Source: Octopus sinensis (taxonomy: Eukaryota). From it: a stretch of DNA of 64,000 bases. Shown in pieces: positions 31,410-64,000 of the stretch (position 1 is the first letter of the stretch; each line of letters starts with the position of its first letter). The translations under genes and the position numbers were made by a program. The stretch is from positions 90,830,001-90,894,000 of the forward strand of contig NC_042998.1 in the NCBI RefSeq assembly GCF_006345805.1. The letters run 5' to 3'. Under the pieces are notes generated by a model. The model had not been told where the DNA came from. It was given only the letters and a program-made list of their open reading frames with translations, and did not search any database.

Positions 31410-31452
<43 letters not shown>

Positions 31453-34285: not shown

Positions 34286-34322
<37 letters not shown>

Positions 34323-40147: not shown

Positions 40148-40474
40148 TTAAATCATAGTCAGAAAAGAAAATTCATTTCAAATTAAGTTGCTTTTGTGAA
40201 ATTTAACACTTTTCTTTTACATGTTTCAGCTAATATAATCATTTTATATTTTGGTATAACATCAGCAATTTTTAGGTGGAGAGGGTTAGTCTATTCCATC
40301 AACACCGGCATTTGACTGACATATTTTATCAAACTTGAAAGGATGAAAAACAAAGCTGACCTCAGCAACATTTGAACTCAGAATGTAATGACCTGGAAAT
40401 GTTGCTAAGAATTTTTTGCCCAACATGCAAACAAGTCTGCCAACTCACTATCTTTAGCTTATAAGCATAATGAT

Positions 40475-44748: not shown

Positions 44749-45888
44749 ACTAGCTGGTGTACCCTGTAATTCCAGAGAGTAAAGATGTTCTATTGAAATA
44801 CCTTATAACTACCACAAAAAGTGTATTTTCCATCACGAAAAAGTACAAAAAACTGTCAGCTGGAGGAGGGAGAGATTGTTGGAGGTTGGTGAGAAAGGTT
44901 TCTGGAAATGCAAAGAAAGATTGTTGGAGGCTGGTGAGAGAGGTTGTCAGAGGTTGGCAAGAGACAAAGACATTATTCTGCTTAGCAAAGGCATCTGGGA
45001 AATGTATAACTGCTGTCATTCACAGAAAAACTATTGTTTTACCGTGATAAAAGTGCTGTTGAAGTGTTAAGTGAATTTGGCAATTGAGGATCGAATCCAC
45101 ACTGTGCCTGCATGAAGCCATTACAAATATGTTGTGGAATAAAAAATTTATCTACTGTCATGGAAAAGTGTAACTGTAAAAATGCAGAATTATCGGAGTA
45201 ATGGGCATTCAAAAAAGTATGTATGTATAGAAATGTATGAATGAAGTCTTTAAGGTTTAAGATTCAAATTAAGGAAGTGCAATAATAATGTTTAGCAGTT
45301 CAAGGCTGTGAGTAGCGAAATGCAGAATTAGGTTGGCTGATTGTGAGAATCAATTATTGATCACATAGCTAAAATCTGCAGGTGGTATGGGTTATTTATT
45401 TGGGTTGTTTAAATAAAATATTAGTAACATGTAGTGGATAGAAGGATCTATTGAAAGGGCTCTATTATTAATTTTTTTCAACAATCTAAGTATGCCACAA
45501 GGTTTCCAGACATGAGTTCTACTCACGTGTCAAATAAAGTATAAAAGTGTCTGCAAGCTTAGAAATAGGACACACAAAAAATCAATATTCAAAGTAATCG
45601 AACATAAACAATGAAATGGGTTATTTCCCTTGAGTGTTTAAAAAAAATATTGTACATGTGCTATGGGTTATTTCCTTTAGGTGTTTTAAAAAAATAGTTG
45701 TATGAGGTAGATATAAAGGTCCTTTCCGGGGGCTGTATTATCGATTTTTTCAACAATTTATGTATGTCACGAGGTTTGCAGATATAAGTTCAACTCGTAT
45801 GCCATCAAAATCAATAAAACAATGGAGGAGGAGTTAACTAACAATGCCACAAACAAACACACACCGATTTTCCACACATGTAGTAGAT
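44749..45888 (+). mobile_element. Helitron/Helentron-like non-autonomous element with internal short tandem repeats
   Basis: Starts ACTAGCTG..ACCC; ends ACAAACAAACACACACC..TAGTAGAT; internal GATTGTTGGAGG(T/C)TGGTGAGA repeats and a ~47-bp duplication at 45616-45700. Confidence 0.4.
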
Positions 45889-45899
45889 ATGATATGATG

Positions 45900-46780
45900 A
45901 TCGTCATATCATCATCATTTAGTATCTGCTTTCCATGTTGGAATGGATTGACAGTTTGACTGGAACTGGTAAGCCAGAGAGCTGCACTAGGTTCAAATCT
46001 GACGTTGGCTTGGTTTCCACGGTTGAATGCCCTTCCTAATGCCAACCACTCAGAGTGTAGTGGGTGCCTTTTATGTGTCACCAGCACTACGTCTACCTCT
46101 TCCACAAGTTCCCTCCACAGTTAGGGATGAGCACTTCATTATACAGCTGTCCTTGTCAATACAAAGCATATGGCCATACCAGTACAGTCACCTCTCCTGC
46201 ACACCACATCTGATGCCTCTTATGCCTAGGTTTTTTCTCAAGACACATACACTCTGTCACACATGCACACTGACACTACACATCCAGCAGAGTATACTAT
46301 TCAAGCCTTCAATGCCCTGTAGCATGGTTGTTCATACACAGGCATCATACAATCTGCCTTTCACTCCGAGGAAGAGGTTCTTTGTTACCAATGAAGGTAG
46401 AAGCACTCTGAACTTTGCCAATCTTTGCTTATTCTAGCAGATATACTCTCAGAGTATCCACCTCCACTGATGACTTGGTCACCTAAATAACGAATGCTAT
46501 CAACCACTTCTATGTATCCCCACTTAACATTTGATGGAGTCTATTTTCTATATCTTTCTAGTGTTTACTGTACCTGTGCATATGCCATACACAAAGACTA
46601 TTTTCCATATTAACCTTCTTCTGATATTGCTGCACCTTGTATGTGTCCATAGCTTGCACCTGGTACACCATATGGAGTTTCTACCTATGCCTTTTCTACA
46701 TATTTAGCAGGGCCATCTGCCTGAAAGGATTTTTGATTTGTCTGCTTTTCTACTTACTATTACTTTGATTACTGCAATTC
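45900..46780 (-). mobile_element. Decayed RTE LINE 3' fragment with internal deletions
   Basis: Reverse complement encodes IDSIRYLGDQV, RISKDWQSSE-like and CMNNHATGH remnants of the RTE C-terminus; (CAT)n tail near 45900. Confidence 0.75.
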
Positions 46781-47725
46781 ATTGTTGGTTTTGCTCTCTT
46801 TCAGTGATATTAATCATTAAAGATGTTGTCAAGTTAGCTCTTATTACAAAAGGAAAATAATATCAAAAATACACAACACCAAATGTTTAAAGGCCATTTT
46901 CTTTGCTAAAGTACGGATTGGCCCAGCAAACCCATATTTGACATGATACCATTTCTGAGGGTAACTTTAGAGAAAGGACTATCAATATAAACAAAACAAA
47001 ACTAGTAAAAGTGGGAACTGAAATTGAATCAGAGCCAACATCTGTATCTAGAGCATTTTACAACAAGATGTTCTTCCTACTGCTGAGCTTTTTAGATGTG
47101 TCTTACAAAACACAAGGATATGGCATACCCATACTAAAACCAGAATATCATGCAAATGTATTAAAATATTCCATAATACCAAATTTTACAAGACACTGTA
47201 TAATTAACAGATAGATACCAAAGTATGTATTAATATTAACTTTTATCTTAAGTATCAAGATAGATCATCATCATCATTTAACATCCGTTGTCCATGCTGG
47301 CATGGGTTGGCCGGTTGACTGGGCTGGCACACTGGAAGGGTACACCAAACTCCAGTCTGATTTGACATGGTTTTCTATGGTTGGATGCCCTTCTTAACAC
47401 CAGAAATTATGCAAATTATTTCATGGTTAAGGACTTGCTTAAAAGTAATTTGGCTTGAACCCACACACATAATGTAGTACAAGAAAACTACCAGTACAAC
47501 AAGCAATTGAGATAATCCCAATATAAGTTTTTTTTGGACAACACAAGAGTGGATCTTGTCTTTAGAGCCAACTGGCGAAAGTAACAAGCATGTGTGAGTT
47601 TTATTAAATCTCCTCAGGGAAATATATTCTACTCAAATGACAAGGCAAAGGATATATATGGGAGAAGGAAGAAATGTAGTGATGTGGATTATGAATATCA
47701 ACAATATGGTTAAGGGAAAGTTACC

Positions 47726-47761
47726 TTATTTAGTATGCAGAGCGCTCTGCATACTAAATAA
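47726..47761. repeat. Perfect 36-bp palindrome without a loop
   Basis: TTATTTAGTATGCAGAGC|GCTCTGCATACTAAATAA. Confidence 0.97.
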
Positions 47762-48524
47762 AAATACAGCAGTTTCACATGTTTTATAGTGAATTAAAAA
47801 ATATGCAGCAAACATCTGAGATTACCCAAACAATTAAGGGTCAAAAACTCTTTCAAGAGGCCTTTAGAATCTAAAGACAACAAACAAGAGTGATAACTCA
47901 GACAAGATCAGTTGACTGAAATTTTTGGACAATACAGATTGAAGTGCATCTGGTTTTTAAAGTGATGTGCCAAAAGTAATGGGCATAAAGTATTAGCATT
48001 AATATTTTCCAAATATAGCAAAATATCTGCTGAAAATAAAGTATAGATCAATAGCTGTCAATAAGCATCGACCTCCTTTCATGTTACAGATGCTAAAATA
48101 ACTCTCATTATACCAATTATACAACAATGTAACCTCTGAACAGATTTACTTATCAAGGCACTTTGTACCCCATGTGACTACACAGATCATTAGCTCATAA
48201 CACTGAGGAAAAATAAATATATAAAAAATATTCGATAATGATGATGATAACAGATCAGAAAACAAACTTCAAAGGAACAACATACTTATCAATAACCTCA
48301 CACACTTTATTCTATTTATGAAACACATTATGTGAATATTCATACAATATCTCTAATCTCAATATTTCCCCAATGAGAATTATTTTACAATATCTTTTCA
48401 TCAAGGTGATCAGATATTCAATCTATACAGTTGTTATTGTTTTAAAATTCTTTTACTGGCCCTGAAGATAGCACTCCCTTGCTAAAGCACTACCTTCATG
48501 GATTTTAAAATGGATCATATCAAT

Positions 48525-48690
48525 CAGGCACACACAGAATGGACTTCTACAGTGTTTCTATCTATCAAATTCCACAGACAAGGCATTGGTCGGTCTGGGG
48601 CCACAAAAAAAGACATTTGCCCAAGGTGCTGCATAGTGGGATTGACCACAGAACCACATAGCTATGAAGTGAAATTATTCACCACACAGC
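48525..48690 (-). mobile_element. CORE-type SINE head
   Basis: Reverse complement GCAGCACCTTGGGCAAATGTC; A/B box remnants. Confidence 0.6.
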
Positions 48691-48899
48691 TATTCTTGTC
48701 TCCTTGTTATTAGAATTACATTTCTCTTATTATTTGTAAGTTGAGAGACAATGAAGTAATGAGTTTGGCAGAAATAAGAGCCTCTAATTAAAAGCTTTAC
48801 ACTATCTATTTTTGTCACTCTAATGTTCTGAATTCATTTCTCCGAAGATAATAAATTAAATACCAGTAATATACAAAGATCTATTCAAGTAACTATCAT

Positions 48900-49150
48900 C
48901 ATTATTTAATATTCATTTCTCATACTGGCATGGATTGGACGGTCTGAAAGGAGCTGACAAGGCCAGAGGCCACACCAGGTTCCATAGTCTGTTTTGTTTG
49001 ATTTCTACAGTTGAATGCCCTTCCTAATGCCAACCACATTAAAGTACACTGGGTGCTTTTTACATGGTACTATCGCCAGTGCTCTTTATGTGGGTCCAGC
49101 ACCAGTGCTTTTTATGTAGCTCCATCACTAGTACTTTTTACATGGCACCA
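48900..49150 (-). mobile_element. RTE-tail element with a ~27-bp tandem amplification of the GCACATAAAAAGCAC motif
   Basis: Repeated CAGTGCTTTTTATGT/ACAT units at 49052-49150. Confidence 0.6.
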
Positions 49151-51898
49151 GCATGTCTAATGAAAATTAAAGGCAAACACCATTTGACAAGTTCAAAGAT
49201 GAAGAACACCACTAAAACCCTCTTTTATCAAAGAGAAAGAGATCTAAGTGAAGTTAGCACAATGTTTCCTTTCAAACTTCAGTAAATAATTTTCCATAAA
49301 AGCGTGAACTGAACATTTTAATTTCACTTTTCCCCATTGTTAAAGAAATTACTTTTACAGCTTGATGTTTAAACTGTACTGGAATTTGTTGCTAATAGAG
49401 AAAAACGTACTAATTAAAGCAGATGAGGTTTGAACTTGTGATCATGTGTACAGTAATCCAACATCTTAAACTCTATATACATGCTTACATTCATTATTCA
49501 AAGAAACATTGAATTCAAGGAGCTTAAAAGGAAGGCTTCTTAAGCAATGTCACCATTATTATGGGTCATGATAATCTTTGCAGGATACTAAAAACATGAA
49601 AACTGTATTATGTGACAGATGTTATCCTTTATTTCTCTTAGGAATAGCAATATTATTCAATAATATTGTTATCTAATACTAGTTTATTATAGATAGAATA
49701 CAAATATTAGTTGATCAATATCAAAACAGTAATCATGAGAAAGCATTGCAAAAAAACCAAAAAAAAAAACCTTTTGTACCTATTTTAGAAGCCTAGATCT
49801 TAAGGAAATTGATTAGTCTTAAACTTCTTTCAATGCCATGCTTCACAGGCTCAGATTTGAAGTCCAACAATATTCTGACTTATCTCCATTTCATTTATAA
49901 AAAGAGATTTCTGCTAGCAACTTAGTTAAAGCTAATCTCTAAACGAGCTGGCTCTGATCCAATTTCAGTTCCCAGTTACACCAGTTTCAATTTAGTTTAC
50001 ATTATTTAAACTGATAATTTTTTTCTCTAAAGAACCCCACTTTCAGTTGATAAGACTACTCTCCCATAGAAGTTATTTTTATTAATTTTGTATGCTGATT
50101 ATGAAAAGCCATAGACTTAGCTATGATATTTCGCAAGTGATAAATAAAATACTGTTTGAGTTTTAGTAGCAACCCATGATGTAAGGGCTAAGTTCTCAAT
50201 GAAAGAAGCATAAGTTTTGTTTCAATTTCCAGCTAGACTGATTTCTTGATGAAATAACATTTGTTAATTCATCTCTATTTAGGCCTCACAGAGTAAAAAA
50301 TGCCTTTTTAAATAATGAGTGTCAACTATTTAAATTCTCGATAGCTAGATAGATAGATAGATAACCAGCCAGACATAATAGGACTGATCCTCACAGGCTG
50401 TTATTGTTTTTGTCTTTTTTCTTTGTGTGGATTTCAAAGTGAAGACAAGAGACCTATATCCCAAGTTTTCTTTGATGAACGGCAGGTGAACTAGAAATAA
50501 ATAAAACACTGATAAACTAAAAGAAAAGAAGAATATACATAATAAAGATCCTTAATGATGTAATTCTTAAAAAATAGGAGTACTTTTGCCCAAGAGCTCA
50601 GACTGACCAGAATTTATGAATAAAACAAAACAGACAGAAATTATGTGGCAGCCTAGTGAATGGACTAATTAAAAAAGACAGCCTTATCAGTATCATGCTA
50701 TTTCAACCTGGAAATTACAGTAAGATATGTCTGTGGAATACTTGACCATTTACATGCTGATTCAATATGTTCTGATGACTGAACAGCTGGAATCTTATTG
50801 TGAAGACTAACAGAATTGGTCTCAATTCTAGAATAGACAAGAAACAATCTTGCAATGACCTTTGAATTACACTTTCAAATCAATTCTTTTTAAAAGAAAA
50901 TATACTTGTTGGAAAATAGTGCAATGTGTAAGAGTACAGAGAACATTTTCTAAAAGAACTGTTCAAATCAATTTTTTTACATATATAACACAAAGAAAAA
51001 TTAATTTTGAAGTCACAGAAAAAGTATCAGCATTAGACATAAAAGAAAAAAATAAACATAACAATTGAAAATCTTTTTTATAATTTACTGTGTGTGCCTG
51101 ATTATTAATGTGGTTGCAAAGTGTGGCTATTACTTCTGAACAAATATCAACCACAAATAGTTTTAAAATACATTTACAAACAGAAACATTCTGTGTTTGT
51201 GGGAAAACAATTGCAAAGAATTCCATTCTTCTTTTCATTTTTGATGGTCAGCATCTGAAAATGTGCTTAGTTAGAAGGAACAATGAAAAATTTATAGCTT
51301 CTAAAAATGTGAAGCCCATATTTCAAACATACCACTTTTGACATATTATAGTGTGAAAACAACTATGTATGTTAGTTGTGGTTATATTTTAGACATAATA
51401 CTGCAAATGCTAAAATTAAGTGCTTTATGTTTTTGTCTTTTTTTTACTCCATATATGATAAACAAATAATCTAGTTCTTTTACATTACTTTTGGCTTAAC
51501 CAGCAATTACTTCTATAAAAATTGTTGCTTTTATTTCTATATGAAGAATGCTTTATCTCCTTTGATCATCATAGATTAATTTTTTAAAAGAGAGAGGCGT
51601 AACTAAATGTCATTCAGTGCTGCCACATCTTCACCCAAAACTTAGATGTATTTCTTACCTTACATTATTTTAACTTCAATGTACAAGTGATGTTTCTCAA
51701 CATGGATACTGAAGTCATCAATTGCAATTAGGATCTCCATGTCACCTAACTTGTAAGTAGCTTTTACTAACATTATAGAATTTTCTGTTCACTATGTTTG
51801 GTTGCATATGCTGATATTGTGTTGCCTGTCACATTCTGTAGCAATACAAGTGCACATACCACTTAGTAACTACAATTTTTTGCTAATATACACACACA

Positions 51899-52110
51899 AA
51901 GGTGGCGAGTTGGCAGACACATTAGCACCCCTTGCGAAATGCTTAGCGGTATTTCGTCTGTCTTTACATTCTCAGTTCAAATTTCACCGAGGTTGACTTT
52001 GCCTTTCATCCTTTCAGGGTCGATAAATTAAGTACCAGATGCGTACTAGGGTCAATCTAATCAACTGGACCCCTCCCCCAAAATTTCAGGCCTTGTGCCT
52101 AGAGTAGAAA
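51899..52110 (+). mobile_element. tRNA-derived SINE, second family; best-preserved copy of about 12 in the window
   Basis: GGTGGCGAGTTGGCAG (A box-like), AGTTCAAATTTC (B box-like), GACTTTGCCTTTCATCCTTTCAGGGTCGATAAATTAAGTACCAG. Fragments also near 480-640, 21010-21420, 31555-31680, 33255-33420, 34870-35015, 36125-37040, 38400-38570 and 40270-40450. Confidence 0.75.
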
Positions 52111-52317
52111 ACAATACACACACACACATACTTCACTAGCACTAACATCATTGTCAAGTGAAAATAATGTTATATTGACAAGCCAATGTGATAGCTTAAT
52201 CTCTAGAAATAGAAGCCACATCTTCCTCAAATCTTACTGTCTTCAATGTTGCCTCACTTTACTTTTCTTGAAAAAGAACAGGATGCTGATGGTTTGAATG
52301 CATTTGCTGAACTAAGA

Positions 52318-52535
52318 TTAAACAATTAACGGTTCTAAGTTCGGAGATGTACTTGCATAGCAAGTGACCTGAGCTGAGATCGTGTGCTGAAATGAAAACA
52401 ATTGCAGCGTGGAAGGCGTTTATAAGCCATTTAAGAAACACACAAAATCCGTTAGATTCACCTCAACATTTAAATTTAATTTGTCAAAATATTTTCGTCA
52501 CTTAGAGACCGCGACCTGTTCACTGACAAAATTCT
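52318..52535 (-). mobile_element. CpG-rich short repeat-like segment carrying a hammerhead-like motif (possible Penelope pLTR)
   Basis: Compositionally distinct island with an ACTTGC-ATA-GCAAGT hairpin and the hammerhead fold. The PLE link is inferred from ribozyme architecture only. Confidence 0.45.
52480..52530 (-). ncRNA. Minimal type I hammerhead-like ribozyme with a G3-C8 covariant core
   Basis: UUUGUCA-GUGAACA-G-GUCGC(ggucucuaa)GUGAC-GAA-AAUAUU-U-UGACAAA: 7-bp stem I, 5-bp stem II (one G-U pair), palindromic AAUAUU stem III. Confidence 0.72.
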
Positions 52536-55500
52536 GTGCTTCCTTCCTTGGCTGATGTATCCTCCACTTCATTTCTTCAAAAGCAACAAGTACATCAAAT
52601 CAGCTCATTACTGTGCATCTTATTCGCTAGTTTTACACTTCAAGTACCCACAGTAACTAGTCTTAGGTATTTCAATTCTCTTATGAAATATATCACATAA
52701 AACAAGATGAATAAGTACAGTTTATTAATTTTAAGTTCTTAAGTATAAATACTATTTACCTATTTACATTTTTATAAATTGCTTTACATCAACAACATTC
52801 TGCATATTTTTTCAATTTGGAGATTGTCTATTTAACTGAAAATAAGTCATGAGATACACACACACATATATATACATAAAATGAAATATGGCACAAACTG
52901 TAAAAACACCTAATTAGATGATTAGAACTTGGTACAGTCTTCTAATTTGCCAGTTCCTCTCAAACCATCCAACCCATACCAGCACAGAAAACGGATGTTA
53001 AATGATGATGAAGAGTAGGAGTGTAGTTTCATCGTAGATTTCTGTTACAAAATCATATTAGGGTTCTTATTTCATTTTTTAAAAATCTTTTAATGAGAAG
53101 GGAAGAGTAGTCTTCATGACACTTTATATAGTCTCCAAGAATAGTGGGTGGGACGAAAGACGGAAGGAATCCTCAAACTGAAGATTCGGTCAGAAAGCTT
53201 GCAACAAAGTGAACTCTACAGAAGGAACCAAATGACCAAGATCAAATAGTGGTGTTAAACTGGGTAACGGGTTAAGTCTACCATTTCTTAAATTCTTTGG
53301 AATGGATAAATAAATTTTACTTAAACAATTGAAATCACAGCTATCCATAAATATTCTTCTTACTATATATATTATCAACAGACATATTAAAATTAATTTT
53401 ATTCTCAAAATTATATAAATATTTTTTTTTTCTAAATTACTGTTTGTTTACATTAAGTACATAAGACAGGGCATACGCTGTATTTCATTTTGTCATGGCT
53501 GAATTTATTTATCATAAATGTATATTAACACGAGCCCAAGTTAAATGATTTACAGGATTTTAGTCATACACACATATTCAATAAAAGCTTAAGGTACACT
53601 GCCAACTTCATAAAGTGATTCTGGAAGAATGTCGCAAATCTAAAAACACACAAATACAACTTGAGGTTGCTATCAAGACTGCGAATTTATAGTGAGCGTG
53701 TTCCTCAACACCTCTAACCTTATATCAAACTTGTCATCTGTTTACAATTATATTAAGTTCTAATTGTAACATTATATCTTTTCTTCATAATTTATTCTGC
53801 CTTTCAACGGACACACTTTTCAATTCGAACTATCATCAACTGAATAACTTCACAGAACAACTTTTCATCAAGTTGAATTATTATAAACTAACGAGCCAAC
53901 GAAGGAACCACGCTCTGCTAGAAATAGCAATCAACTCACAAGTTACATTCTCGTGTAAAAGAGATCAACAGAAGAGTACATTAGATAATGTAGTCCTGAA
54001 TATACAAAAAACAGATGAGATGGACAGAGTGGGAACATCTTTTTGGATCATAAGTTGGCTAGATTGCAACTAACTTGGAGCTAAAGAATATTACTCACTA
54101 ATTATGTTTGTCAAAGTCAGCTGATGTCACACTTCCTCTTTTAGAATAATCCAAAGAAAAATATTTCACCAATGACTGGATCTACCTTGACTCAATAGCA
54201 TGTAAACAGATTTAAAATATGAAATATGGGGCAGTATTTTGTATTTTCGAAAGATATTTAGATGTCAAAAAATTAGTGGAGTTTCTTTCAGAAATTTACG
54301 AAGTGCATACATAAGATTTATTAAAGATAGTAAATAAACAATATTTTGTTAAGATATCAACTTTAATAAAGAGTTTGACAAGGAGTTGAAAATTTAGCTA
54401 CGATATATTCATTACATAAAAGTTTTTATTTTTATAACTTAGATTATTCTCCCAGATGAATTTATCGAAGTGTATATTGAATTCCGAACGCGATAAACTA
54501 TTACAGCCTCTTTTGTTATGATTAAATATAATCTTTTACAAATTTACAAGGTCTAATGGAAAGTTTTGCAATCAAGTCGTATGATTTATTTTATAAATAT
54601 AGACATATACATTTTGTGAAATTTCAAACGCAAACATCTCAAAATACAATATAAACAGAATTTATAAGTGGACGCAAAACAAACAGTATAATAATAACAG
54701 GAACTTAAGGTAATAAATACTATCAGAATTGTTATTATAGCCTATTAGTGAAAATGGAAGAGGGCAATTGTCCTATAAATTAAAGGACATAAGTTACGCT
54801 CTGTATAATTGACATATGATAAAATATGATCATTGAAAACACATCGGTGTTGACATTTGAAAATTGATTTTGAACAACCTAAAACTTAGAGGAAAGAGAG
54901 AAGAAAATGACAAAAGGAAAAAAAATAAAGTAAAACATCTACACAGTACTAAGAGTAACCGTCAGAAAATTTAAGGAATTATTTATATAAGTTAGTTGGG
55001 TTTTTTTAAGAACAGCGTGCATTACAATATGAACTTGTATCTTTTATATAGTTCTACTACGTCAATCTTGGCTTTGCAATCACGATCGATGTGAGAGAAC
55101 ATTTTTTTTTTCTTAATGTCTACAAACACTGTTGGCTTCTTCATATAGGTCAGTTCTCCCAGATGCTAACTTGTGGCGTAAATCTTACTTCCTCTACTAC
55201 CAGAAACTAATACTTTAATCGTTGCACCATCCAAACTCTCTGATTGTAGCAGATCATTTAGTCCAAACATTTAAAGATTAATCAAAACTGTCAACGAATT
55301 AAAGTAAATAAAACAAGTGGGAAACAAACAAACAAAAACAAACAAAAACAAAACTGGTATATTAAGAGCAGGAGAGATGTGTAGCACTCGAGAATTGTAA
55401 TTTAAAATTGTTTATAAATTATTAATTAAAACTATCGACAAGAAAACAATGAGTCCAAGTTTGTTTCGTGTTTGAAGACAACACCCCCCCTTTTTTTCCA

Positions 55501-55681
55501 CATATTTTAATAACAACAATAATGATAGTAATACGAAACTTGAACAGCAAACCATTAAGTTTAAGATAAATGAAAACTACCACATAAATGTTCATCATAA
55601 TCATTACAATGCGTTATCCCTTTAGAAACAGCAAAAAGTTAAAAAGGTAATAAATAGGGCGTAATATAATTGATGACCCAC

Positions 55682-55740
55682 CTTTAAAGTTGCTCGTCAC
55701 TAAAGACATTACAGCACAGTCCGTCCATGTAATTCATTGA
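55682..55740 (-). other. GAPVD1: Candidate non-coding first exon of GAPVD1
   Basis: Donor AAG|gtgggt at 55681, directly downstream of the NRF1-like site. No transcript evidence. Confidence 0.4.
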
Positions 55741-56000
55741 TGCGCATGCGTATATCTACTGGTAGGGATCATACATTTTCAATGGTTGTTCTTGACAACT
55801 TCCGTTATAAATTTTGTCTAATTTTCGTTTGAAATTAAATACAGTCTATTTCTTACTCAAATAAAATACTAAAATTATTTCCAAAATTTAAAATATACCT
55901 AAATTAAATAATTACCCAAAATACTGAACTTTTACGAGATGTTGTATATGAGTTAACAACTTGCCCCCAACGAAAAGTTTTTCTCTGACGGAAGTCAATA
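55741..56000. promoter_or_regulatory. Putative bidirectional promoter shared by GAPVD1 and PCM1
   Basis: TGCGCATGCG at 55741-55750; ACTTCCG at 55798-55804 and CGGAAGT at 55989-55995 in opposite orientations; CpG-enriched surroundings; divergent genes. Confidence 0.6.
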
Positions 56001-56048
56001 GTATAGTATACTGTTCTTTGAAAATTCGAAACATAGTGACTAAATTTG

Positions 56049-56145
56049 GTAAGCTAATCTTTCTTTCACTATGACTGCTTTATATGTATAAAGACAAAGT
56101 AAGATATTCTTCTTATTCGTTTACTTTTTAAGTCACTAATTTTAG
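56049..56145 (+). other. PCM1: 97-bp 5'-UTR intron of PCM1 (alternative donor at 56099)
   Basis: TTG|gtaagc ... pyrimidine tract ... ttttag|TGG, 23 nt before the ATG. Confidence 0.65.
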
Positions 56146-56168
56146 TGGTTGTTGCTTGTTTTGAAGTC

Positions 56169-59100
56169 ATGGCAACAGGAGGATCACCATCAAAGGGATC
56201 TTCGTCAGATTCGCATGCCCGCTCTGGATGGCAAAGTACGTCAGATGATGCCGTTAGTATGAATAGCATTCAGAATGAACTGCGTCCAAATAATTTAGAG
56301 GTTAGTGAATGGAAAGAGTCAACCCTTGAATCAAATAAGCGACGTAAAAAAGGAAACCGCGAGAGGGAACGCGAAAGAGGTCAGTCCTTGTTACAAGATC
56401 TCCCTTCTCCTACAGAACGACGCCAACATACTCCGTCATCATATTCTCGTACGAAATTACCTCCAAATGCTGAGTTAAGTGAAAGAATGGAATTAGAAAA
56501 TTTAAAACAGCACTTCAGTTTTGATGATTATGAAGTGAGTAGTGATGATGAAAAAAATAATGAAAAGACTGTGTCATTTAATCGACGTGATATGCCTCCG
56601 AATTATACTCGTCAAGATACTTCTAGCACGATTAGTGAACATCATCGCCATTCTGACGGCGAATCAAGAAAAAATCAAAAAACAAACAAGAAAAATAGAA
56701 ATCGTACTGGTGATGCACGTTATCCGAGCGAAGAAATTGAAGAAAAAGAAAAGAATGATGAGAAAAGAGGCGCTCAAAATAACATTTCGCAGGACAGGGC
56801 CCAAGAAGCTATTACTGACAGTAATCAAATTGTTGCTAGAATGATGCAAATTAAAGATTATAGAAAGCAAATAAAATTAATGATGGATACATTACAGGAA
56901 TCAGATGATCCCACGGATCATCGCAAAATCAGCAAGCTAGCACAAGTTCTAAATTCATTGGAAGAACAAGAAAGCAGCTACATGGAAATCTTACAGAAAT
57001 TATGGATTATTCGTAAAAGAGCCCTGTTAAATAGTAAATCTAATCCTAATGAAACTGCAAAAGGAGACTCACCTGATGATACAGATTCAGTTGATTCACA
57101 AACTTCTGACCCAGCTTTACACACATTTACATCTGGTCTTCCTGAAAAAAGTGAAGATTTAACATCTATAGAACAGCAGCAAATTTTACTGAAACAAATA
57201 ATGGAACAAAAAGAACAATTAAAAAAATTGCAAGAACGCCAATCTGCTTTATTGGCCATAGAAAAAGATGCTGTTCAGAAATTGGCTGAAGCAAAAGAAA
57301 GACAGAGACTCCTACAAGACCCGACAGTGGATAATATGGCAGCACCTGAGTTTGCCTTTTACCAAAGAGATAACCAACCAGCAGAAAATACCATAGAAGA
57401 TGTCATTGAAGAACATAGGAAAATGCAAAATAACCTTCCATTGTCAAACCCTCAGTCAGAAGACAATTTAATGACTGTCGATTTAGAGAATCTTGGTTTT
57501 GATCCGGCTGATTTCCAAGAAAGAATTTGCCAAGGACGTCTTTCTTTGCAAAATAAATTAAAACATCTTCAAGAGAAACGGAGATGTGTTAATGAACTGC
57601 TGCGTTATGTTAAATCTTTGCGATCTCAAAGCACTGATGACATGTCACAGATGAATAACAACCCAGAAAACACTGAGAATAGTGTGCAAAATTCTGAAAA
57701 TGTTACAGAAAAAACTGATTCTCCAGAAGATGATCTAAATTTACCTGAACCTAATGAAAAATGGGAAGAATTACTTGGAGTAAGGGAACGACTTAATCAC
57801 CTAAGATCACTATTTAAAGAATATCAGGTTTGTGCTAATGATGAAGCTACTGAAGCAAAAGATGTAACTTCTACTGAAGAAGGGGAAAAAACACAAAACC
57901 ACCAGCAAATTAAAAGTTCTTCCTGTGAAGCATCTGACAAATATTCTGACTCAAACCATATTCAAAACCTTTCAGATTTTGAGGAAGATTTTAATACTGA
58001 ACTTGGTTCATTAATAAGCCAGCCAGGAGTGCGTGACAAACTCAATGAACTCCAAGAGGCAAAGGATCGTTTAAGACATCTTCAAAAATTAATTAATAAA
58101 CTTAATGATTCTCCTGATGGTCCCCCTGAACAAACTGCTGAAGAGTTGGCAGAAGTCCTTGCTCAGAGTGATAATCAAGCTATTAGCAAACAACTTTCCA
58201 GGTCAGCTGGTTTGCCAGAGGCTAGTGCCTTACCCAATGGAGCTGACTTCACACAAGTAAGTCATGATCAATTAATTCCTTTACAAAATAAATCTGCTAA
58301 GCTTAAATTGAAAATGCAAGAACAACAACTTGAAGTAGATCGTCTGAAGGATCAACGTGAAAGACTTCTCTCTTTTCATCAGCAGCTTTTAAACTTCCAT
58401 GATAGTTTACCAAGTTGGAATGATGAGATGGATAAATCTGATCGAGATAAGACTAATGAAGTGACTTTTGCTCCAGAACCAGAAATACAAGATCTTAACC
58501 AAATGACATATTCTTCAAATGATGAACTCTACAATAAAATGAGGAAAGAAAGAATTCAAAGAGAAGAACTTAGGCAAAGAAAGAAAGAAATGGAAGATTT
58601 AATGCACAAGGATAAACCTAAGCGTAATTATTCTCGTAATCAAGATAATCAAAGTGATTCAGTGTCTTATTCTACTGACTTCCTTGGAGCTAATACAAGT
58701 GCAGATGTAACTATGGCGACTTGGGGTGGTTCTACAGCTGATAATTTTGAGAATATAAATGAAGGTTGTGATAGGGATGATGATGAAGAGGAGGAGGAAG
58801 GTGATGATGATGAAGAAAGGGATGATATTAATGAAGAATTTAATGAGGATGATGATTATTTAAGTGATGTGATAAGAGATGCAGAAGAAGGAGGAGAATC
58901 TTCTAGTAAAGAAACTTATACTATTGAAAAAGATGCAAGAAGGCATGTTAAACAGTCTCAACCAGGTTTACTGGGTTGTATGCCATTAGACTCTAGAGGG
59001 AACTTCCCTCCTGGAAAGAGAAATAAATATTGTTGCCAACGTTCTGATTCTAAGGGAAACTCACCAAATCAAAAGCAATTTGGTCGAACTAACAGTGGCT

Positions 59101-61838
59101 TTGCTCGAAAGCAAGAAAACATTCGTGCTGCAGAATATATAATTCAAGAAGATGAACATGATGAAAGTTTGCAGTCTGAAAGCAGCCCTCTGAATATAAT
59201 TGAAAGACAGATGGATAAAATGGCTAACACTTATCAAGAACTGCTAATTGAACAGCAACAGCTTCGTCAACAGTTACATATGATGAGATATCAAAATACC
59301 AATGCATTTGCCTTTGATGCCAACCAACCAACTAATATGTACTGGCAATCTAATCCATTTTTAACACCCCCTGCTGAAGTTCAAAACTCAGCTTCACAGC
59401 AGCAGATTTTATTAGCATTGAGTCAGTGTTTTCAACAACTTTCAGTTCAGCAGTCTGAAATGAATAATTTACAACGCCAACTCCACACATTGGTTTTACA
59501 ATCTTCAAGAACCGATTCTACTTCTACAAATTCATATATGCAGAATTCATTTCCTACTGGTGTCAATCAATGGAAGAAACCCAGACATTTCTGTTGGGAA
59601 CCTTACCCTCAAAATCCATACCTCTGCAGTAATAGATTTTCTAGTCCCCTGCTAAAACCTGATGCCATACAGAAAACAAAAGCAAGAAGTAATAATATGC
59701 TTTCTTCCACAGTTCCCACCACTAAATCAAGAAAACGAACAAATTCTTCAGACAAAAATTTCAGACGTCGACATCTAAATAAACAACATTGTGATAAAGA
59801 TAATGCTGAAAAATGTCCTAAAGGCTGTAGTCAGACTTGTTCATATTTTTGGAACTTTTCTAACACAAATAAGGACGATGTGGTTGATGTCCCAGCAAGA
59901 TCTAAAAAATTATCTGCATCATCTCGGCAAAAACACACTGCTAATTCATCATCAAAAAATATGACATCTGAAGATGGCAAAAAGAAATTAAAATCATCTC
60001 AGAATACATTAGAATTCAAGCAAGAAGCACCTAATGCTTCTGCTAAATTTTATCCCAAGTCTACTAGTAACAATTCAAGCAGTAAGAAAACCAAAAATGG
60101 AGGTGTGTGGTCAAATAAAACTACAGCTGATCTTGTGAATCAGTGTGACTCAGGAGCTACAAAGAAAGAAAATATTTCAGATCAACTAGATTCTAATAGT
60201 TTTGATTCTCTCAAGTCAGATATCTATGCTGAAGTTGCAAAGTTAATATCTCAGAATGAAAAACACCCCAAATATATGATCTCTTTATTTCAGAAACTCC
60301 AATGTTTTGATTCTTATAGCAAGCGTGATCATATAATGGGTATCATAGATGCTTTGATAGAACAAGCACGATATAACCAGACATTATTTTCTTCTAAATT
60401 CGATGAATTCCCACGTCCTAATCTGACATCTAACAGAATCTCACTTATTTCTGATAATGCCAAAATAGAAAACACATTAAGAACGAAAACTCAGGATTCA
60501 TCTAGCGATGATTCTGGTAGTGAAATAATACAGGTTGTGGCTCCAGTTTCTGATATGCACTTACAGTTTGCTGAAGACTCATTGAAGAAAGCTTTGCATC
60601 AGATGACAAAGCAACATCAAGCTGGAAGTCGAGACAAAATATTAAATAGGGAGCTCCATCATTCAAGTCACACTGCTGTGGACCAAGGAAGTGAGAGCTC
60701 TGTTTCAGATATGGTAGTTGTAAAAAGTGATAACCAAAATGTCTCAGAAATAATTAAGGAAATCTCTAAACAACTAATCCCAATCATTAACCTTCACAAA
60801 AATGAAACGTTTTCTGAAGTAATTATTAGTGATGTTCAACAAAAAATAGTAATTTTATATCGTCAGTTCTTTTCTGAACAAGATATCAATTTCAAGCATT
60901 TGAACTCTAATCTTTATAATAATCTAATAGAATTCAAAAACCAGAGAGTTGCAGATTGCTACCATGCAGTGCTCAAGAAAATATCTGATGTCCTGCACAA
61001 TGAACTGTCATATTTCAGATTAATGGAAGATCTTGGTGAAAATACTTTATCTAAAAGTTTTCTTGATAGACTAACACTTTTTAGTCAAAACACTAATGAC
61101 ACTTCAATAGTAGACCAGTTAAGAAATGATTCAGATACCACTTTGGTGGCATCAGGAACCCAGTTGCTAGCAGATGGAGACTTAACCACGAGAGATTCTT
61201 TATTATCTTGCCGCAAGAAATTGTCTGATAATATACAGGTTGATGTAAAGGAAAAGAATAGATATGAGAATGCAGAAGAAATGCCAAATGGCTTTTTATC
61301 TTGTTCAAGCAAAGATAGTCAAAATCCAGGTGTACCAATGGAAATTGAACTTGCTGTCAGTGAGACAAAGCCATTTTCAAAAATTGGCAGTGATGAAGAT
61401 GATGAAGATGATGATGAATCTCATAATGCTGAAGACCCTTCGGTAACTGCTGTTTCTTTGGCAACTGAGAAAGAAAACCATTGTTTTCCTGAAAGAGGAG
61501 ATGGAGATATTCCTTCAAAAATAAAGAATTCTGACTCTGGAATTTCTGGGAAGCCAAATGGTTTGCTCCCTAAATCTTCAAATGATACAAATCACACCAC
61601 TCCATCAAACGAACATGATCAACTTATTCCATCGGCCGATGATCAGCTTCAAGTTGAGGATATACCAAATGTTTTACAGTCATTGTCAAATGACCAGCTT
61701 GAAGAGGCCATAAATGATCAGTTTACCCCTGGAGCTGCTTTCTTTGAAAACATTGAAAAGAATGAATTAGCTGGAGACAGTGAAGCCTTACCTTGCAACA
61801 AGTTAAACTCACAGTTTGATGCTGCTAGTGATCCTTAA
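56169..61838 (+). CDS. PCM1: Pericentriolar material 1 protein, single coding exon, 1889 aa
   Basis: MATGG start (gtcATGG); ELENLKQHFSFDD, DSNQIVARMMQIKDY, EEQESSYMEIL, TMATWGGST, SDIYAEVAKLISQNE, ELAVSETKP..GSDED, VEDIP and ELAGDSE are colinear with vertebrate PCM1 from N- to C-terminus. Confidence 0.93.
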   Translation: MATGGSPSKGSSSDSHARSGWQSTSDDAVSMNSIQNELRPNNLEVSEWKESTLESNKRRKKGNRERERERGQSLLQDLPSPTERRQHTPSSYSRTKLPPNAELSERMELENLKQHFSFDDYEVSSDDEKNNEKTVSFNRRDMPPNYTRQDTSSTISEHHRHSDGESRKNQKTNKKNRNRTGDARYPSEEIEEKEKNDEKRGAQNNISQDRAQEAITDSNQIVARMMQIKDYRKQIKLMMDTLQESDDPTDHRKISKLAQVLNSLEEQESSYMEILQKLWIIRKRALLNSKSNPNETAKGDSPDDTDSVDSQTSDPALHTFTSGLPEKSEDLTSIEQQQILLKQIMEQKEQLKKLQERQSALLAIEKDAVQKLAEAKERQRLLQDPTVDNMAAPEFAFYQRDNQPAENTIEDVIEEHRKMQNNLPLSNPQSEDNLMTVDLENLGFDPADFQERICQGRLSLQNKLKHLQEKRRCVNELLRYVKSLRSQSTDDMSQMNNNPENTENSVQNSENVTEKTDSPEDDLNLPEPNEKWEELLGVRERLNHLRSLFKEYQVCANDEATEAKDVTSTEEGEKTQNHQQIKSSSCEASDKYSDSNHIQNLSDFEEDFNTELGSLISQPGVRDKLNELQEAKDRLRHLQKLINKLNDSPDGPPEQTAEELAEVLAQSDNQAISKQLSRSAGLPEASALPNGADFTQVSHDQLIPLQNKSAKLKLKMQEQQLEVDRLKDQRERLLSFHQQLLNFHDSLPSWNDEMDKSDRDKTNEVTFAPEPEIQDLNQMTYSSNDELYNKMRKERIQREELRQRKKEMEDLMHKDKPKRNYSRNQDNQSDSVSYSTDFLGANTSADVTMATWGGSTADNFENINEGCDRDDDEEEEEGDDDEERDDINEEFNEDDDYLSDVIRDAEEGGESSSKETYTIEKDARRHVKQSQPGLLGCMPLDSRGNFPPGKRNKYCCQRSDSKGNSPNQKQFGRTNSGFARKQENIRAAEYIIQEDEHDESLQSESSPLNIIERQMDKMANTYQELLIEQQQLRQQLHMMRYQNTNAFAFDANQPTNMYWQSNPFLTPPAEVQNSASQQQILLALSQCFQQLSVQQSEMNNLQRQLHTLVLQSSRTDSTSTNSYMQNSFPTGVNQWKKPRHFCWEPYPQNPYLCSNRFSSPLLKPDAIQKTKARSNNMLSSTVPTTKSRKRTNSSDKNFRRRHLNKQHCDKDNAEKCPKGCSQTCSYFWNFSNTNKDDVVDVPARSKKLSASSRQKHTANSSSKNMTSEDGKKKLKSSQNTLEFKQEAPNASAKFYPKSTSNNSSSKKTKNGGVWSNKTTADLVNQCDSGATKKENISDQLDSNSFDSLKSDIYAEVAKLISQNEKHPKYMISLFQKLQCFDSYSKRDHIMGIIDALIEQARYNQTLFSSKFDEFPRPNLTSNRISLISDNAKIENTLRTKTQDSSSDDSGSEIIQVVAPVSDMHLQFAEDSLKKALHQMTKQHQAGSRDKILNRELHHSSHTAVDQGSESSVSDMVVVKSDNQNVSEIIKEISKQLIPIINLHKNETFSEVIISDVQQKIVILYRQFFSEQDINFKHLNSNLYNNLIEFKNQRVADCYHAVLKKISDVLHNELSYFRLMEDLGENTLSKSFLDRLTLFSQNTNDTSIVDQLRNDSDTTLVASGTQLLADGDLTTRDSLLSCRKKLSDNIQVDVKEKNRYENAEEMPNGFLSCSSKDSQNPGVPMEIELAVSETKPFSKIGSDEDDEDDDESHNAEDPSVTAVSLATEKENHCFPERGDGDIPSKIKNSDSGISGKPNGLLPKSSNDTNHTTPSNEHDQLIPSADDQLQVEDIPNVLQSLSNDQLEEAINDQFTPGAAFFENIEKNELAGDSEALPCNKLNSQFDAASDP

Positions 61839-63307
61839 ATAATTTATAATGCTAACAAGTTTGGATTAATTTTGGTATCTGATTGTTGATCTTAGACACT
61901 CAGAAAAAAAAAAGACATTTTTAGACTTGGTATTTCTTCCAATATAAACTGTTGCTGTTGAGTGTGTATATTTTAAAGGAAGAATTTTTTTTTGCTTGTT
62001 TCCCCCTATCCCTTTGACTTTTGTGTGAAGTAGTAACTTAAGCAATTTATTTCTCTCTTGTATACATTGAGTTTTATTGATGCCATTACAATTTTTCTAC
62101 AACTTTCCAGAAGAGATCCATGGAATTCAGTACAAACTTATTTTTCAGCAGTTCTTTCACATCTTAGTATCAGCTGTATCTTCCCTTAAGCTGTTAATTG
62201 TAGCTGTTTGAACAAATTGGACTAACCTGCTATACAGTTCACACCTTCGTATTTTAAAAGATTTCGTTTTTGATACTTGATATTTATTGTTGATTTCAGT
62301 TATTTTTAATCTTATATAATATTTAAAGCTTAATTATTATATTTCTGTTTTTTATGTATATATAGTACCTTTTACATTACCAAAGATGAATTTTCATTTT
62401 CCTTGCATATGCTTTCTTTAGCAGTTATAGGTGGACACGTTTTTTTAATAATCCGTCCAGATGTTTTAAATAAGTAGATTTACTAGAGAAATTTTATACA
62501 TCTGTATGCTTGGAATTAATCCATAGGGCCATTTTCTTGAAGTGTTTCAGTTGTTTCCCCACTTTACCCTAGATGACTTGTAAATTACTCTCATGCTAAA
62601 ACCTATTTGTAAGTGTAACTGTGAACTCTAAGTATGTGTTGGCTAGTAGCAGGTAGAAAAAAGTTCACTGAGAGGGATAAATAACTTTAGCCTTGAGGAA
62701 GAGGTCTAACGTTTCCAGTTCCGTCATCTGGGTCAAATGATGAAATTGTAATTGTGATCGATTATTAAGGACCAAAGTTCATATTCTTTTAATGGAATAG
62801 AGAGTATTTTACATTGACATATTAATTTGCTTTGGGGTTGCTGTTTTTCTTACCAAATTAACTACTGCAGTTTTTCAACCAATTGTATCAAAATTCTTAT
62901 TGAGACTAAATTGTTTTAAAATACAACTTATCACTGGTCTTAATTTTTAACTCTCCAAAACTAGTTTTGTTACAAAATAAGTATTTAGTTACTTTAATAT
63001 TAGATTAATTCCAAATATATTTCAAACATCAAAACATCTGACTCAGTGAGTAAATATCAAGAATTCCATAATCTCCTTATGAAGTAGAAAATTTTTATGC
63101 TTGAATTTTGTTTTGTATTTAATTGCTGTTATTTTGAATGTAAAGTAAATGTACTTCAAAATTTGTTTGACAATTTTAGTTTTTCTAATACTTATTAGAA
63201 ATTTATATTTCAATTCTTTTTTGGTTCCCATTGATATATCAATTCCTACTTATACTTAATAACCTTTCAAAATTGTTAGCGGTTTCCTTTCTTTGAAAGT
63301 CAAATTC

Positions 63308-63313
63308 AATAAA
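63308..63313 (+). promoter_or_regulatory. Candidate PCM1 polyadenylation signal AATAAA (another at 63766-63771)
   Basis: Hexamer match only, in AT-rich sequence. Confidence 0.25.
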
Positions 63314-64000
63314 ATCTAAATAGAAAATATTTCTCTGTTACTGTTGACATATTATAAACAATAATGAAGACATAGCTATAAGTATATGTATTTTAGCATT
63401 ACATTTGGAACTAATATATGCACACTATCTGGATCTCTGATTTTAATCTTGCAGTTTTGAATTACTAGCTTTAAGTACTGCAAATTGTAATCATTTATTT
63501 CACATTGATAGAATAGATTTTTAAAAAAAAGGTGCAGCTGTCCTTTGTGCAGAAAGTCTTCTTAATGGTCCAGAACACATAAATGCTTTTTGCGTTTTCA
63601 AAATGTTCTGCAGTATAATATATTTGAATTTTTCTATTATGAAAAATCAATTTATTTCTTAGCTTCATGTAAATTTTTTTTGAAAAATGAATATTTTCAA
63701 TGCACAATTTTCTCTCCAGACTTATTTTTCAGTATCATTTGTTTCTTTTGGTTATTTATAGTGTCAATAAACTTCTTCCAAACATTTGTATTTAATTTCT
63801 TGCATTTATATCACTTTTATTACAAATTCCTAATAGGTGTATTATATCAATGGAAGGATTTAGCCTTTCCCTTTCATCTATTAATAATTCATCTTTTTTA
63901 ACTTGGACTTCATCAAATATTGAAAAAACTCTGCACAGCAGCCTATGTTTACCAATATTTTGAATGGAATTCAGTAAATGGACACTTTATATCATATCTT

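What the first reader, a model, noticed from the sequence alone, without database searches (positions are those of the whole stretch)
56049..61838. PCM1 encoded by a single 5.67-kb exon with only a 5'-UTR intron
Seen: an uninterrupted ORF colinear with PCM1 from start to stop, plus one small upstream intron, while neighbouring GAPVD1 has kb-scale TE-filled introns. Established: vertebrate PCM1 has several dozen exons. Inference: either a retrocopy that recruited the GAPVD1 promoter and replaced or duplicated the parent, or wholesale RT-mediated intron loss in place.
Basis: partly seen in the sequence, partly recalled or inferred. Interest (0 to 1): 0.7.

Follow-up and report, generated by a model that had tools for sequence, protein, structure and literature searches.

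The report
Intronless PCM1 gene shared by coleoid cephalopods
Octopus PCM1, a centrosome-satellite scaffold gene with 33 coding exons in a pearl oyster, is encoded by one uninterrupted 5.7-kb exon, but this is an ancient, functional state shared with argonauts and cuttlefish relatives, most likely an old retrogene that replaced its parent.

Summary
The core observation holds. Window 56169-61838 (+) is one 1,889-codon ORF, 100% identical to Octopus vulgaris PCM1. It carries a PCM1_C domain and is colinear with bivalve, starfish and turtle PCM1 from residue 1.

The state is not octopus-specific. The same single-ORF gene occurs in a second Octopus species, in Argonauta hians and on a 230-kb decapodiform genomic contig. 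A poly(A)+ Sepia esculenta mRNA is colinear with that contig (largest gap 15 nt). Bivalve PCM1 is intron-rich: Pinctada has 33 coding exons over 40 kb, and Potamilus spans 116 kb. So all coding introns were lost before the octopus-cuttlefish split.

The gene is under purifying selection (dN/dS 0.16-0.23). No second PCM1 appears among annotated octopod proteins.

GAPVD1 lies head-to-head with PCM1 in both octopus and decapodiform. The two share a conserved promoter that looks bidirectional (NRF1-like site plus an inverted ETS pair). Pinctada PCM1 has different neighbours.

Best reading: an ancient retrogene replacement that used the GAPVD1 promoter (about 0.55). Intron loss in place through a cDNA remains possible (about 0.3).

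The 97-nt 5'-UTR intron (56049-56145) is only a prediction, and cuttlefish mRNAs read through the homologous stretch. This is a new example of a known phenomenon, of moderate interest.

The parts
56169..61838 (+). PCM1 coding sequence: 1,889 codons plus TAA, with no intron
56049..56145 (+). Predicted 97-nt 5'-UTR intron (TTG|GTAAGC ... TTTTAG|TGG); unverified
   Evidence: Read from the sequence. The donor block is conserved in all coleoids and the acceptor only in octopods. Sepia mRNA reads through the homologous stretch.
56002..56048 (+). Inferred non-coding exon 1 or start of the leader. The transcription start site is placed by homology to the 5' ends of the Sepia mRNA contigs.
   Evidence: L004, L006 and L007 start 6-9 nt after the ETS-like motif
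56146..56168 (+). 5'-UTR part of the coding exon
56035..56053 (+). Block AGTGACTAAATTTGGTAAG, conserved from octopods to decapodiforms. It contains the putative splice donor.
55989..55995 (+). Forward ETS-like motif CGGAAGT, at -180 from the ATG (-176 to -196 in the other species)
55798..55804 (-). Reverse ETS-like motif (ACTTCCG on the + strand), at -371 (-370 to -392 in the other species)
55742..55750 (.). NRF1-like palindrome GCGCATGCG, at -427 (-443 in the decapodiform)
55682..55790 (-). Inferred non-coding first exon of the divergent transcript, probably GAPVD1. It ends in the conserved donor AAG|GTGGGT. The 5' limit is approximate.
20792..55681 (-). Inferred GAPVD1 intron 1 (34.9 kb), carrying interspersed repeats
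19556..20791 (-). GAPVD1 first coding exon (ATG at 20710, RasGAP domain), preceded by a conserved polypyrimidine tract and AG acceptor
61839..63330 (+). Candidate PCM1 3' UTR, with AATAAA at 63308 inside a block conserved with Argonauta. The end is approximate.

Best explanation
This is the only, functional PCM1 orthologue of coleoid cephalopods. All of the roughly 32 coding-region introns present in other molluscs were removed in a single reverse-transcriptase-mediated event before octopods and decapodiforms diverged. The most likely route is this: a full-length PCM1 mRNA was reverse-transcribed and inserted next to the 5' end of GAPVD1; it was expressed from that gene's ETS/NRF1-type bidirectional promoter; and it then took over from the multi-exon parent, which was lost (retrogene replacement, also called an 'orphan retrogene'). 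Shown here: the intronless structure in four cephalopod genomes, its multi-exon state in bivalves, purifying selection, transcription and polyadenylation in cuttlefish, GAPVD1-PCM1 head-to-head linkage in both coleoid lineages, and conserved promoter motifs. Inferred: that the route was retroposition, that the divergent transcript is GAPVD1, and that the parent is absent from the genome rather than merely unannotated. The general claim (an ancient, functional PCM1 that lost its introns through reverse transcription) deserves about 0.9 confidence. The figure given below is for the retroposition route specifically.
For: Single ORF in O. vulgaris, a sister Octopus species (genomic contig L009, 93% nt, colinear over 9.2 kb), Argonauta hians and a decapodiform 230-kb genomic contig. 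L004 and L006 are Sepia esculenta RNA-seq contigs. L006 ends in AATAAA plus poly(A). They are colinear with the decapodiform genome, with no gap above 15 nt. Pinctada has 33 coding exons and 32 introns over 40 kb, all absent from the octopus ORF. Potamilus spans 115.8 kb. dN/dS is 0.16-0.23 for all pairs and along the whole gene. No second Octopus or Argonauta PCM1 appears among 98 hits. GAPVD1's ATG exon lies head-to-head with PCM1 in octopus (35.5 kb between ATGs) and on the same decapodiform contig (15.3 kb). The NRF1-like site, reverse ETS, forward ETS and leader block sit at nearly identical offsets in four genomes, while the ETS heptamers occur only 2 and 1 times in the whole 64 kb. A conserved minus-strand donor lies next to the reverse ETS, and a conserved acceptor lies 81 nt before GAPVD1's ATG. 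Both immediate neighbours differ from those in Pinctada: GAPVD1 and DDX39 in octopods against Sedlin_N and APD1-4 genes in Pinctada. The neighbours GAPVD1 and DDX39 keep their introns. A documented precedent with the same anatomy is AmphiSYCP1 (PMC5803294).
Against: No poly(A) remnant or target-site duplication is visible, although none would be expected after more than about 250 Myr. Loss of microsynteny with one bivalve is weak evidence, because coleoid genomes are extensively rearranged (own knowledge, not tested here). No genome-wide search for relics of a parental copy was possible. A full-length retrocopy of an mRNA of about 8.5 kb is unusually long. If the leader intron is real, a single remaining 5'-most intron is also what cDNA-mediated conversion in place would predict. 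That the divergent transcript is GAPVD1 rests on motifs, not RNA data.
Confidence: 0.55

Rival explanations
1. Intron loss in place. A full-length or near-full-length PCM1 cDNA recombined with the resident multi-exon gene in the coleoid stem lineage and erased every intron between the crossover points. The adjacency to GAPVD1 and DDX39 arose separately through the genome rearrangements of coleoids.
For: The outcome is the same precise, in-frame removal of 32 introns. There is only one PCM1 gene, so no parental loss needs to be assumed. If the predicted 5'-UTR intron (56049-56145) is real, a single surviving 5'-most intron is the classic signature of recombination with a cDNA (Fink's model; own knowledge). 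Its donor block is conserved across coleoids. Retroposition hallmarks are absent.
Against: Both immediate neighbours differ from those in Pinctada. The promoter looks shared with an unrelated gene and has no detectable similarity to the Pinctada PCM1 upstream region. The leader intron is not supported by cuttlefish mRNA. Erasing all 32 introns over 5.7 kb in one conversion event is rare, since such losses are usually partial and biased towards the 3' end (own knowledge).
Confidence: 0.32
2. PCM1 was ancestrally intronless, and bivalves and vertebrates gained their introns independently.
For: None directly. Only one non-cephalopod mollusc could be mapped exon by exon.
Against: Two distant bivalves are intron-rich, and exon-sized PCM1 ORFs occur on genomic contigs of another bivalve-like cluster. 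Vertebrate PCM1 has several dozen exons (own knowledge). Gaining more than 30 introns independently is far less parsimonious than one loss.
Confidence: 0.03
3. Artefact: cDNA contamination or misassembly produced an apparently intronless gene.
For: None.
Against: The same structure appears in four independent assemblies or species, embedded in genomic flanks with conserved neighbours and promoter.
Confidence: 0.01

Closest known systems
Amphioxus SYCP1 retrogene replacement (Garstang & Ferrier 2018, PMC5803294)
   Same: In both cases a gene that is large and multi-exon in most animals exists as a single coding exon, the parental copy is gone, the state is shared across related species, and the gene sits head-to-head with an unrelated gene whose bidirectional promoter it appears to use, with a new 5' UTR (searches compared).
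   Different: The PCM1 exon is much longer (5.7 kb against about 3.2 kb). The event is older and spans an entire subclass, not one genus. AmphiSYCP1 has an experimentally shown multi-exon 5' UTR, whereas here the single leader intron is only predicted and is not seen in cuttlefish mRNA. There are no expression data for the octopus gene.
'Orphan retrogenes' / retrogene replacement in general (Krasnov et al. 2005 and Ciomborowska et al. 2013, as cited in PMC5803294)
   Same: An intronless functional copy under purifying selection, with no intron-bearing parent in the same genome.
   Different: Membership requires showing a change of locus and true absence of the parent. Here the first is only suggested by different neighbours in one bivalve, and the second rests on annotated proteomes alone.
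cDNA-mediated (RT-mediated) intron loss by homologous recombination (Fink 1987 model; own knowledge)
   Same: Precise removal of many adjacent introns, and possibly a surviving 5'-most intron.
   Different: That mechanism keeps the gene at its ancestral locus with its own promoter. Here the flanking genes and promoter partner differ from those in the bivalve.
Canonical PCM1 of vertebrates and bivalves
   Same: Orthologous protein: PCM1_C domain, about 1,900-2,100 aa, colinear from the N-terminus to near the C-terminus.
   Different: Gene structure: 33 coding exons over 40 kb in Pinctada against one coding exon in coleoids. The protein is only about 30% identical to bivalve PCM1 and 22-26% identical to vertebrate PCM1.

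Membership tests
PCM1 (pericentriolar material 1) orthologue | PCM1_C domain (PF15717) above Pfam's gathering score | tested here: met
   82.7 bits against a cut-off of 27.4, E = 3.3e-23, residues 1352-1792
PCM1 (pericentriolar material 1) orthologue | Full-length colinearity with PCM1 of other phyla | tested here: met
   Ordered HSPs from residue 1 to about 1874 against Pinctada, Potamilus, Asterias and Chelonia PCM1. All 98 database hits are PCM1.
PCM1 (pericentriolar material 1) orthologue | Scaffold of centriolar satellites (localisation and function) | not testable with these tools
   Needs cell biology. Purifying selection (dN/dS about 0.2) only shows that the protein is in use.
Retrogene replacement (orphan retrogene) | Coding region without introns where orthologues are multi-exon | tested here: met
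   (32 Pinctada introns absent)
Retrogene replacement (orphan retrogene) | No intron-containing parental copy left in the genome | tested here: inconclusive
   No second Octopus or Argonauta PCM1 among annotated proteins. A genome-wide TBLASTN was not possible.
Retrogene replacement (orphan retrogene) | Located at a locus different from the ancestral one | tested here: inconclusive
   Neighbours are GAPVD1 and DDX39 in coleoids against Sedlin_N and APD1-4 genes in Pinctada, with no cross-matches. The ancestral locus is unknown and coleoid genomes are rearranged.
Retrogene replacement (orphan retrogene) | Poly(A) tract and target-site duplications at the insertion | tested here: not met
   No A-run follows the cuttlefish poly(A) site in the read-through contig L007, and none is evident in the octopus 3' region. 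Erosion is expected at this age, so this hardly counts against membership.
Retrogene replacement (orphan retrogene) | Functional: expressed and under purifying selection | tested here: met
   Poly(A)+ mRNA in Sepia esculenta RNA-seq. dN/dS is 0.16-0.23, and the ORFs are intact in six sequences.
Retrogene replacement (orphan retrogene) | Recruited a pre-existing promoter | tested here: inconclusive
   A conserved inverted ETS pair with an NRF1-like site, a minus-strand donor, and an acceptor in front of GAPVD1's ATG exon fit a promoter shared with GAPVD1. There are no RNA or CAGE data.
In-place cDNA-mediated intron loss | Gene remains at the ancestral locus with ancestral neighbours | tested here: inconclusive
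   Not met against Pinctada, but one outgroup and a rearranged genome do not decide the matter.
In-place cDNA-mediated intron loss | Surviving 5'-most intron(s) | tested here: inconclusive
   A GT-AG candidate lies at 56049-56145, and splicing it removes 2 upstream ATGs. It is not spliced in the cuttlefish mRNA contigs, and the acceptor is not conserved in decapodiforms.

The most novel reading that the evidence does not exclude
The PCM1 retrogene replacement is a rare genomic change that marks the coleoid (or whole cephalopod) stem lineage. It may be one visible case of a wider burst of reverse-transcriptase-mediated gene replacement or intron erasure that accompanied the retroelement expansion and genome reorganisation at the origin of coleoids. 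On this reading, long housekeeping genes were re-seeded beside the bidirectional promoters of other genes.
Probability: 0.12. Interest if true: 0.6.

Novelty: new member of a known kind. Interest (0 to 1): 0.35.

Why it matters
PCM1 is the scaffold of centriolar satellites and is a long, intron-rich gene in the non-cephalopod animals checked here. A 5.7-kb single-exon version that has served as the only copy across octopods and cuttlefish relatives is one of the longest plausible cases of retrogene replacement. It is a natural experiment in running a large housekeeping gene with no splicing in its coding region, from a promoter apparently shared with another gene. As a discrete, effectively irreversible character, it could also serve as a phylogenetic marker for cephalopod relationships (the Nautilus state is unknown) and prompt a systematic count of such events in coleoid genomes. 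It does not reveal a new mechanism.

Tried and rejected
(1) Gene-structure look-ups for the chiton Liolophura (P0006) and the gastropod Pomacea (P0011) failed, because only the longest isoform of a gene is indexed. Non-cephalopod evidence therefore rests on two bivalves. (2) Potamilus gave a gene span but no DNA. (3) I first took the 9-kb Logan contig L009 for an Octopus transcript that could test the leader intron. It is colinear with 2 kb of intergenic DNA, so it is genomic and says nothing about splicing. (4) TBLASTX of Pinctada's PCM1 flanks against all cephalopod loci found nothing, as did TBLASTX of the octopus DDX39 region against the decapodiform 10-kb downstream flank. (6) The Pinctada PCM1 upstream region shows no similarity to the cephalopod promoter or leader. 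(7) I considered spending the last protein search on DDX39 to look for GAPVD1-DDX39 co-occurrence on outgroup contigs (an 'empty site' test). I rejected it because DDX39 exons are so conserved that clusters at 90% identity merge species, and only the longest contig is reported. (8) Literature searches found no report on cephalopod PCM1 gene structure. (9) I considered a tandem-duplication origin for the leader intron, suggested by 13/16-matching direct repeats at its two ends. I set it aside because the octopod and decapodiform leaders have nearly the same length.
Full report
**What is in the window**

Positions 56145-61838 (+) hold the only long ORF in the last 10 kb of the window. The first ATG is at 56169 and the stop (TAA) at 61836-61838, giving 1,889 codons. 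From the window's base composition, a stop-free run of this length has a chance probability of about 10^-63.

The protein has a PCM1_C domain well above Pfam's threshold (82.7 bits, E = 3.3e-23). It is 100% identical over its full length to the Octopus vulgaris protein CAI9718089.1. The window matches chromosome OX597815.1 at about 123.17-123.19 Mb.

The ORF aligns in order from residue 1 to about residue 1874 with PCM1 of Pinctada, Potamilus, Asterias and a turtle.

**No hidden introns**

- The O. vulgaris and Argonauta annotations give gene ranges exactly equal to the CDS length.
- The RefSeq O. bimaculoides PCM1 model (XP_014784191.1, 1,889 aa) aligns to the ORF without a single gap.
- For decapodiforms there is direct RNA evidence. 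Contigs L004 and L006 come from runs SRR23936182 and SRR25114245, which are Sepia esculenta larval RNA-seq libraries.
- L006 ends in AATAAA followed by a poly(A) tail.
- Both contigs are colinear with a 230-kb decapodiform genomic contig (L002) over 6 kb. The largest genome-only gap is 15 nt. The two sequences are from different species (87% nt identity).

**How widespread the intronless state is**

The same uninterrupted ORF is present in four cephalopod genomes:

| Source | Evidence |
|---|---|
| O. vulgaris | the window itself |
| Sister Octopus species | genomic Logan contig L009, 93% nt identity, colinear with window 53088-62325 |
| Argonauta hians | 1,893 aa in 5,682 nt |
| Decapodiform genomic contig | 1,947 aa in 5,844 nt |

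The three non-octopod proteins (P0003 from Sepia esculenta, plus P0004 and P0005) are 66-82% identical to each other and 44-49% identical to the octopod proteins. That pattern fits decapodiforms.

Bivalves are different. Pinctada imbricata PCM1 spans 40.1 kb, and I mapped 33 coding exons and 32 introns. Potamilus PCM1 spans 115.8 kb. Exon-sized PCM1 ORFs also lie on genomic contigs of a further bivalve-like cluster.

Of the 32 Pinctada intron positions, 27 project onto aligned octopus residues spread from codon 36 to codon 1842, and the octopus ORF runs through all of them. Vertebrate PCM1 has several dozen exons (my own knowledge; not tested here).

The parsimonious reading is one complete loss of coding introns before the octopod-decapodiform split. 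From the literature as I recall it, that split is roughly 250-300 Myr old. dS between octopus and the decapodiform is saturated at 2.6, which fits a deep divergence.

**Function**

All six cephalopod ORFs are intact. Pairwise dN/dS is 0.16-0.23 at every depth, and 0.08-0.36 in 250-codon windows along the gene. No second PCM1-like protein from Octopus or Argonauta appears among the 98 significant hits. This is the working PCM1 of these animals, not a decaying or supernumerary retrocopy.

**Neighbourhood and promoter**

The ORF at 19547-20758 (-) has a RasGAP domain, and its named homologues are GAPVD1. Its ATG is at 20710.

The best hit for that exon (81% identity) lies on the same decapodiform contig as PCM1: record positions 97,149-98,345 (-) against PCM1 at 113,680-119,523 (+). 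GAPVD1 and PCM1 are therefore head-to-head in both coleoid lineages. The ATGs are 35.5 kb apart in octopus and 15.3 kb apart in the decapodiform.

Four short elements upstream of the PCM1 ATG sit at almost the same offsets in O. vulgaris, Octopus sp., Argonauta and the decapodiform:

| Element | O. vulgaris | Octopus sp. | Argonauta | Decapodiform |
|---|---|---|---|---|
| NRF1-like GCGCATGCG | -427 | -427 | -427 | -443 |
| Reverse ETS-like ACTTCCG | -371 | -371 | -370 | -392 |
| Forward ETS-like CGGAAGT | -180 | -180 | -176 | -196 |
| Block [G/C]ACTAAATTTGGTAA | -131 | -131 | -127 | -142 |

The two ETS heptamers occur only 2 and 1 times in the entire 64 kb. Cuttlefish mRNA contigs from three libraries start within 3 nt of each other, 6-9 nt downstream of the forward ETS motif.

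On the minus strand, an exon-like block ending in the donor AAG|GTGGGT (window 55682|55681) is conserved in all four genomes. GAPVD1's ATG exon is preceded in both lineages by a polypyrimidine tract and an AG acceptor 81 nt upstream of the ATG (window 20792-20793).

Together these features fit a bidirectional promoter in which a non-coding GAPVD1 exon 1 lies back-to-back with the PCM1 start site. This is an inference from sequence, not from RNA.

Downstream of PCM1, tail-to-tail, is a multi-exon DDX39/UAP56-type helicase in both O. vulgaris and Argonauta. In Pinctada the immediate neighbours are a Sedlin_N gene (head-to-head, about 6 kb away) and an APD1-4 gene. Nothing from those flanks matches the cephalopod loci, and the Pinctada upstream region shares no promoter architecture with them.

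**The 5'-UTR intron**

The sequence offers TTG|GTAAGC (GT at 56049-56050) and TTTTAG|TGG (AG at 56144-56145), which would be a 97-nt intron ending 23 nt before the ATG.

- For: the donor lies in the block conserved across all coleoids. The acceptor is conserved among the three octopods. The unspliced leader has two upstream ATGs and the spliced one has none.
- Against: the decapodiform sequences lack a good acceptor at the homologous place. The cuttlefish mRNA contigs contain the whole segment unspliced. The conserved block also extends well beyond what a splice donor needs, so it may be a promoter or leader element instead.

I could not obtain octopus RNA evidence, so this part of the finding remains a prediction.

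**Mechanism**

Removing 32 introns cleanly implies a processed-RNA intermediate. There are two routes.

- **Retroposition followed by loss of the parent.** This explains in one step the total intron loss, the new neighbours on both sides and the sharing of another gene's promoter. [quoted passage not shown] I give it about 0.55.
- **Conversion in place by a full-length cDNA.** This needs no parental loss and would naturally leave a 5'-most intron. However, it requires a separate rearrangement that placed PCM1 precisely back-to-back with GAPVD1. I give it about 0.32.

The usual hallmarks of retroposition (a poly(A) remnant and target-site duplications) are not visible, but they would not survive this long. 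The difference in microsynteny rests on a single bivalve, and coleoid genomes are known to be scrambled (own knowledge). The choice is therefore not settled.

Independent intron gain in other lineages (about 0.03) and artefact (about 0.01) are effectively excluded by the multi-species data.

**Comparison with what is known, and novelty**

The protein is an ordinary PCM1 orthologue. The gene structure belongs to the known class of retrogene replacement, or complete RT-mediated intron loss.

What is unusual is the size (a 5.7-kb CDS; the cuttlefish mRNA is about 8.4-8.6 kb), the age, and the breadth, which covers both major coleoid lineages. I found no paper describing it.

I rate it a new member of a known kind, of moderate interest. 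It is a good candidate phylogenetic marker and a lead for a genome-wide survey, but it is not a new mechanism.

The region between GAPVD1's ATG exon and the PCM1 promoter (20792-55681) is at least 21% interspersed repeat, judged only from copies within the window. The PCM1 CDS, promoter and 3' region contain none. A LINE-type reverse-transcriptase ORF lies at 1282-2727 (-). Only one GAPVD1 coding exon could be placed, so 'kb-scale TE-filled introns' is plausible but only partly checked.

Noticed in passing
window 55742-56053; L001 9574-9888; L002 9558-9873; L009 2502-2812: A compact promoter module (NRF1-like GCGCATGCG, an inverted pair of ETS-like CGGAAGT motifs about 190 bp apart, and a leader block) keeps nearly identical spacing from octopods to a decapodiform. 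It looks like a deeply conserved bidirectional promoter between PCM1 and, apparently, GAPVD1.
   Followed up: partly
window 56035-56050 and 56131-56146: The predicted leader intron is bounded by near-identical direct repeats, AGTGACTAAATTTGGT and AGTCACTAATTTTAGT (13 of 16 matching), in register with the GT donor and the AG acceptor. The second copy is octopod-specific. This may be chance or a trace of how the acceptor arose; it is unexplained.
   Followed up: partly
window 1282-2727 (-): An intact 481-aa ORF with a reverse-transcriptase domain (RVT_1, E = 1.9e-32), i.e. a LINE-like retroelement. It lies downstream of the GAPVD1 ATG exon, presumably in a GAPVD1 intron.
   Followed up: no
window 6814-7302 (-) and 7172-7271: A 100-N assembly gap interrupts an ORF whose translation reads like a mariner-type transposase fragment (judged by eye, not tested). 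Nearby, at 5.8-6.8 kb and 9.0-10.6 kb, are long TA/CA-rich microsatellite tracts.
   Followed up: no
window 3373-4354, 35027-36112, 38804-39401, 25708-26150, 46091-46759: Several copies, 65-80% identical, of at least two interspersed repeat families lie on both strands within the GAPVD1 region. None occurs in or next to PCM1.
   Followed up: no
L011 20234-25670 (-); L001 19091-25682 (-): The gene tail-to-tail with PCM1 is a DDX39/UAP56-type DEAD-box helicase (an mRNA-export and splicing factor). It is multi-exon and keeps its position in Octopus and Argonauta. It was not seen within 10 kb downstream in the decapodiform contig.
   Followed up: partly
window 19556-20710 (-); one search hit list: The first roughly 385 residues of GAPVD1, including the RasGAP domain, are one exon in octopus. 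They also appear as single ORFs of about 370-400 aa on genomic contigs from many other invertebrates (for example the 382-aa Lottia model), so this long exon looks ancestral and not a second case of intron loss.
   Followed up: no
L004 1-182, L005 1-404 (Sepia esculenta mRNA contigs): The cuttlefish PCM1 leader, as assembled, carries two very short upstream ORFs, and the octopus unspliced leader also has two upstream ATGs. This could mean uORF-based translational control if the leader is not spliced.
   Followed up: no
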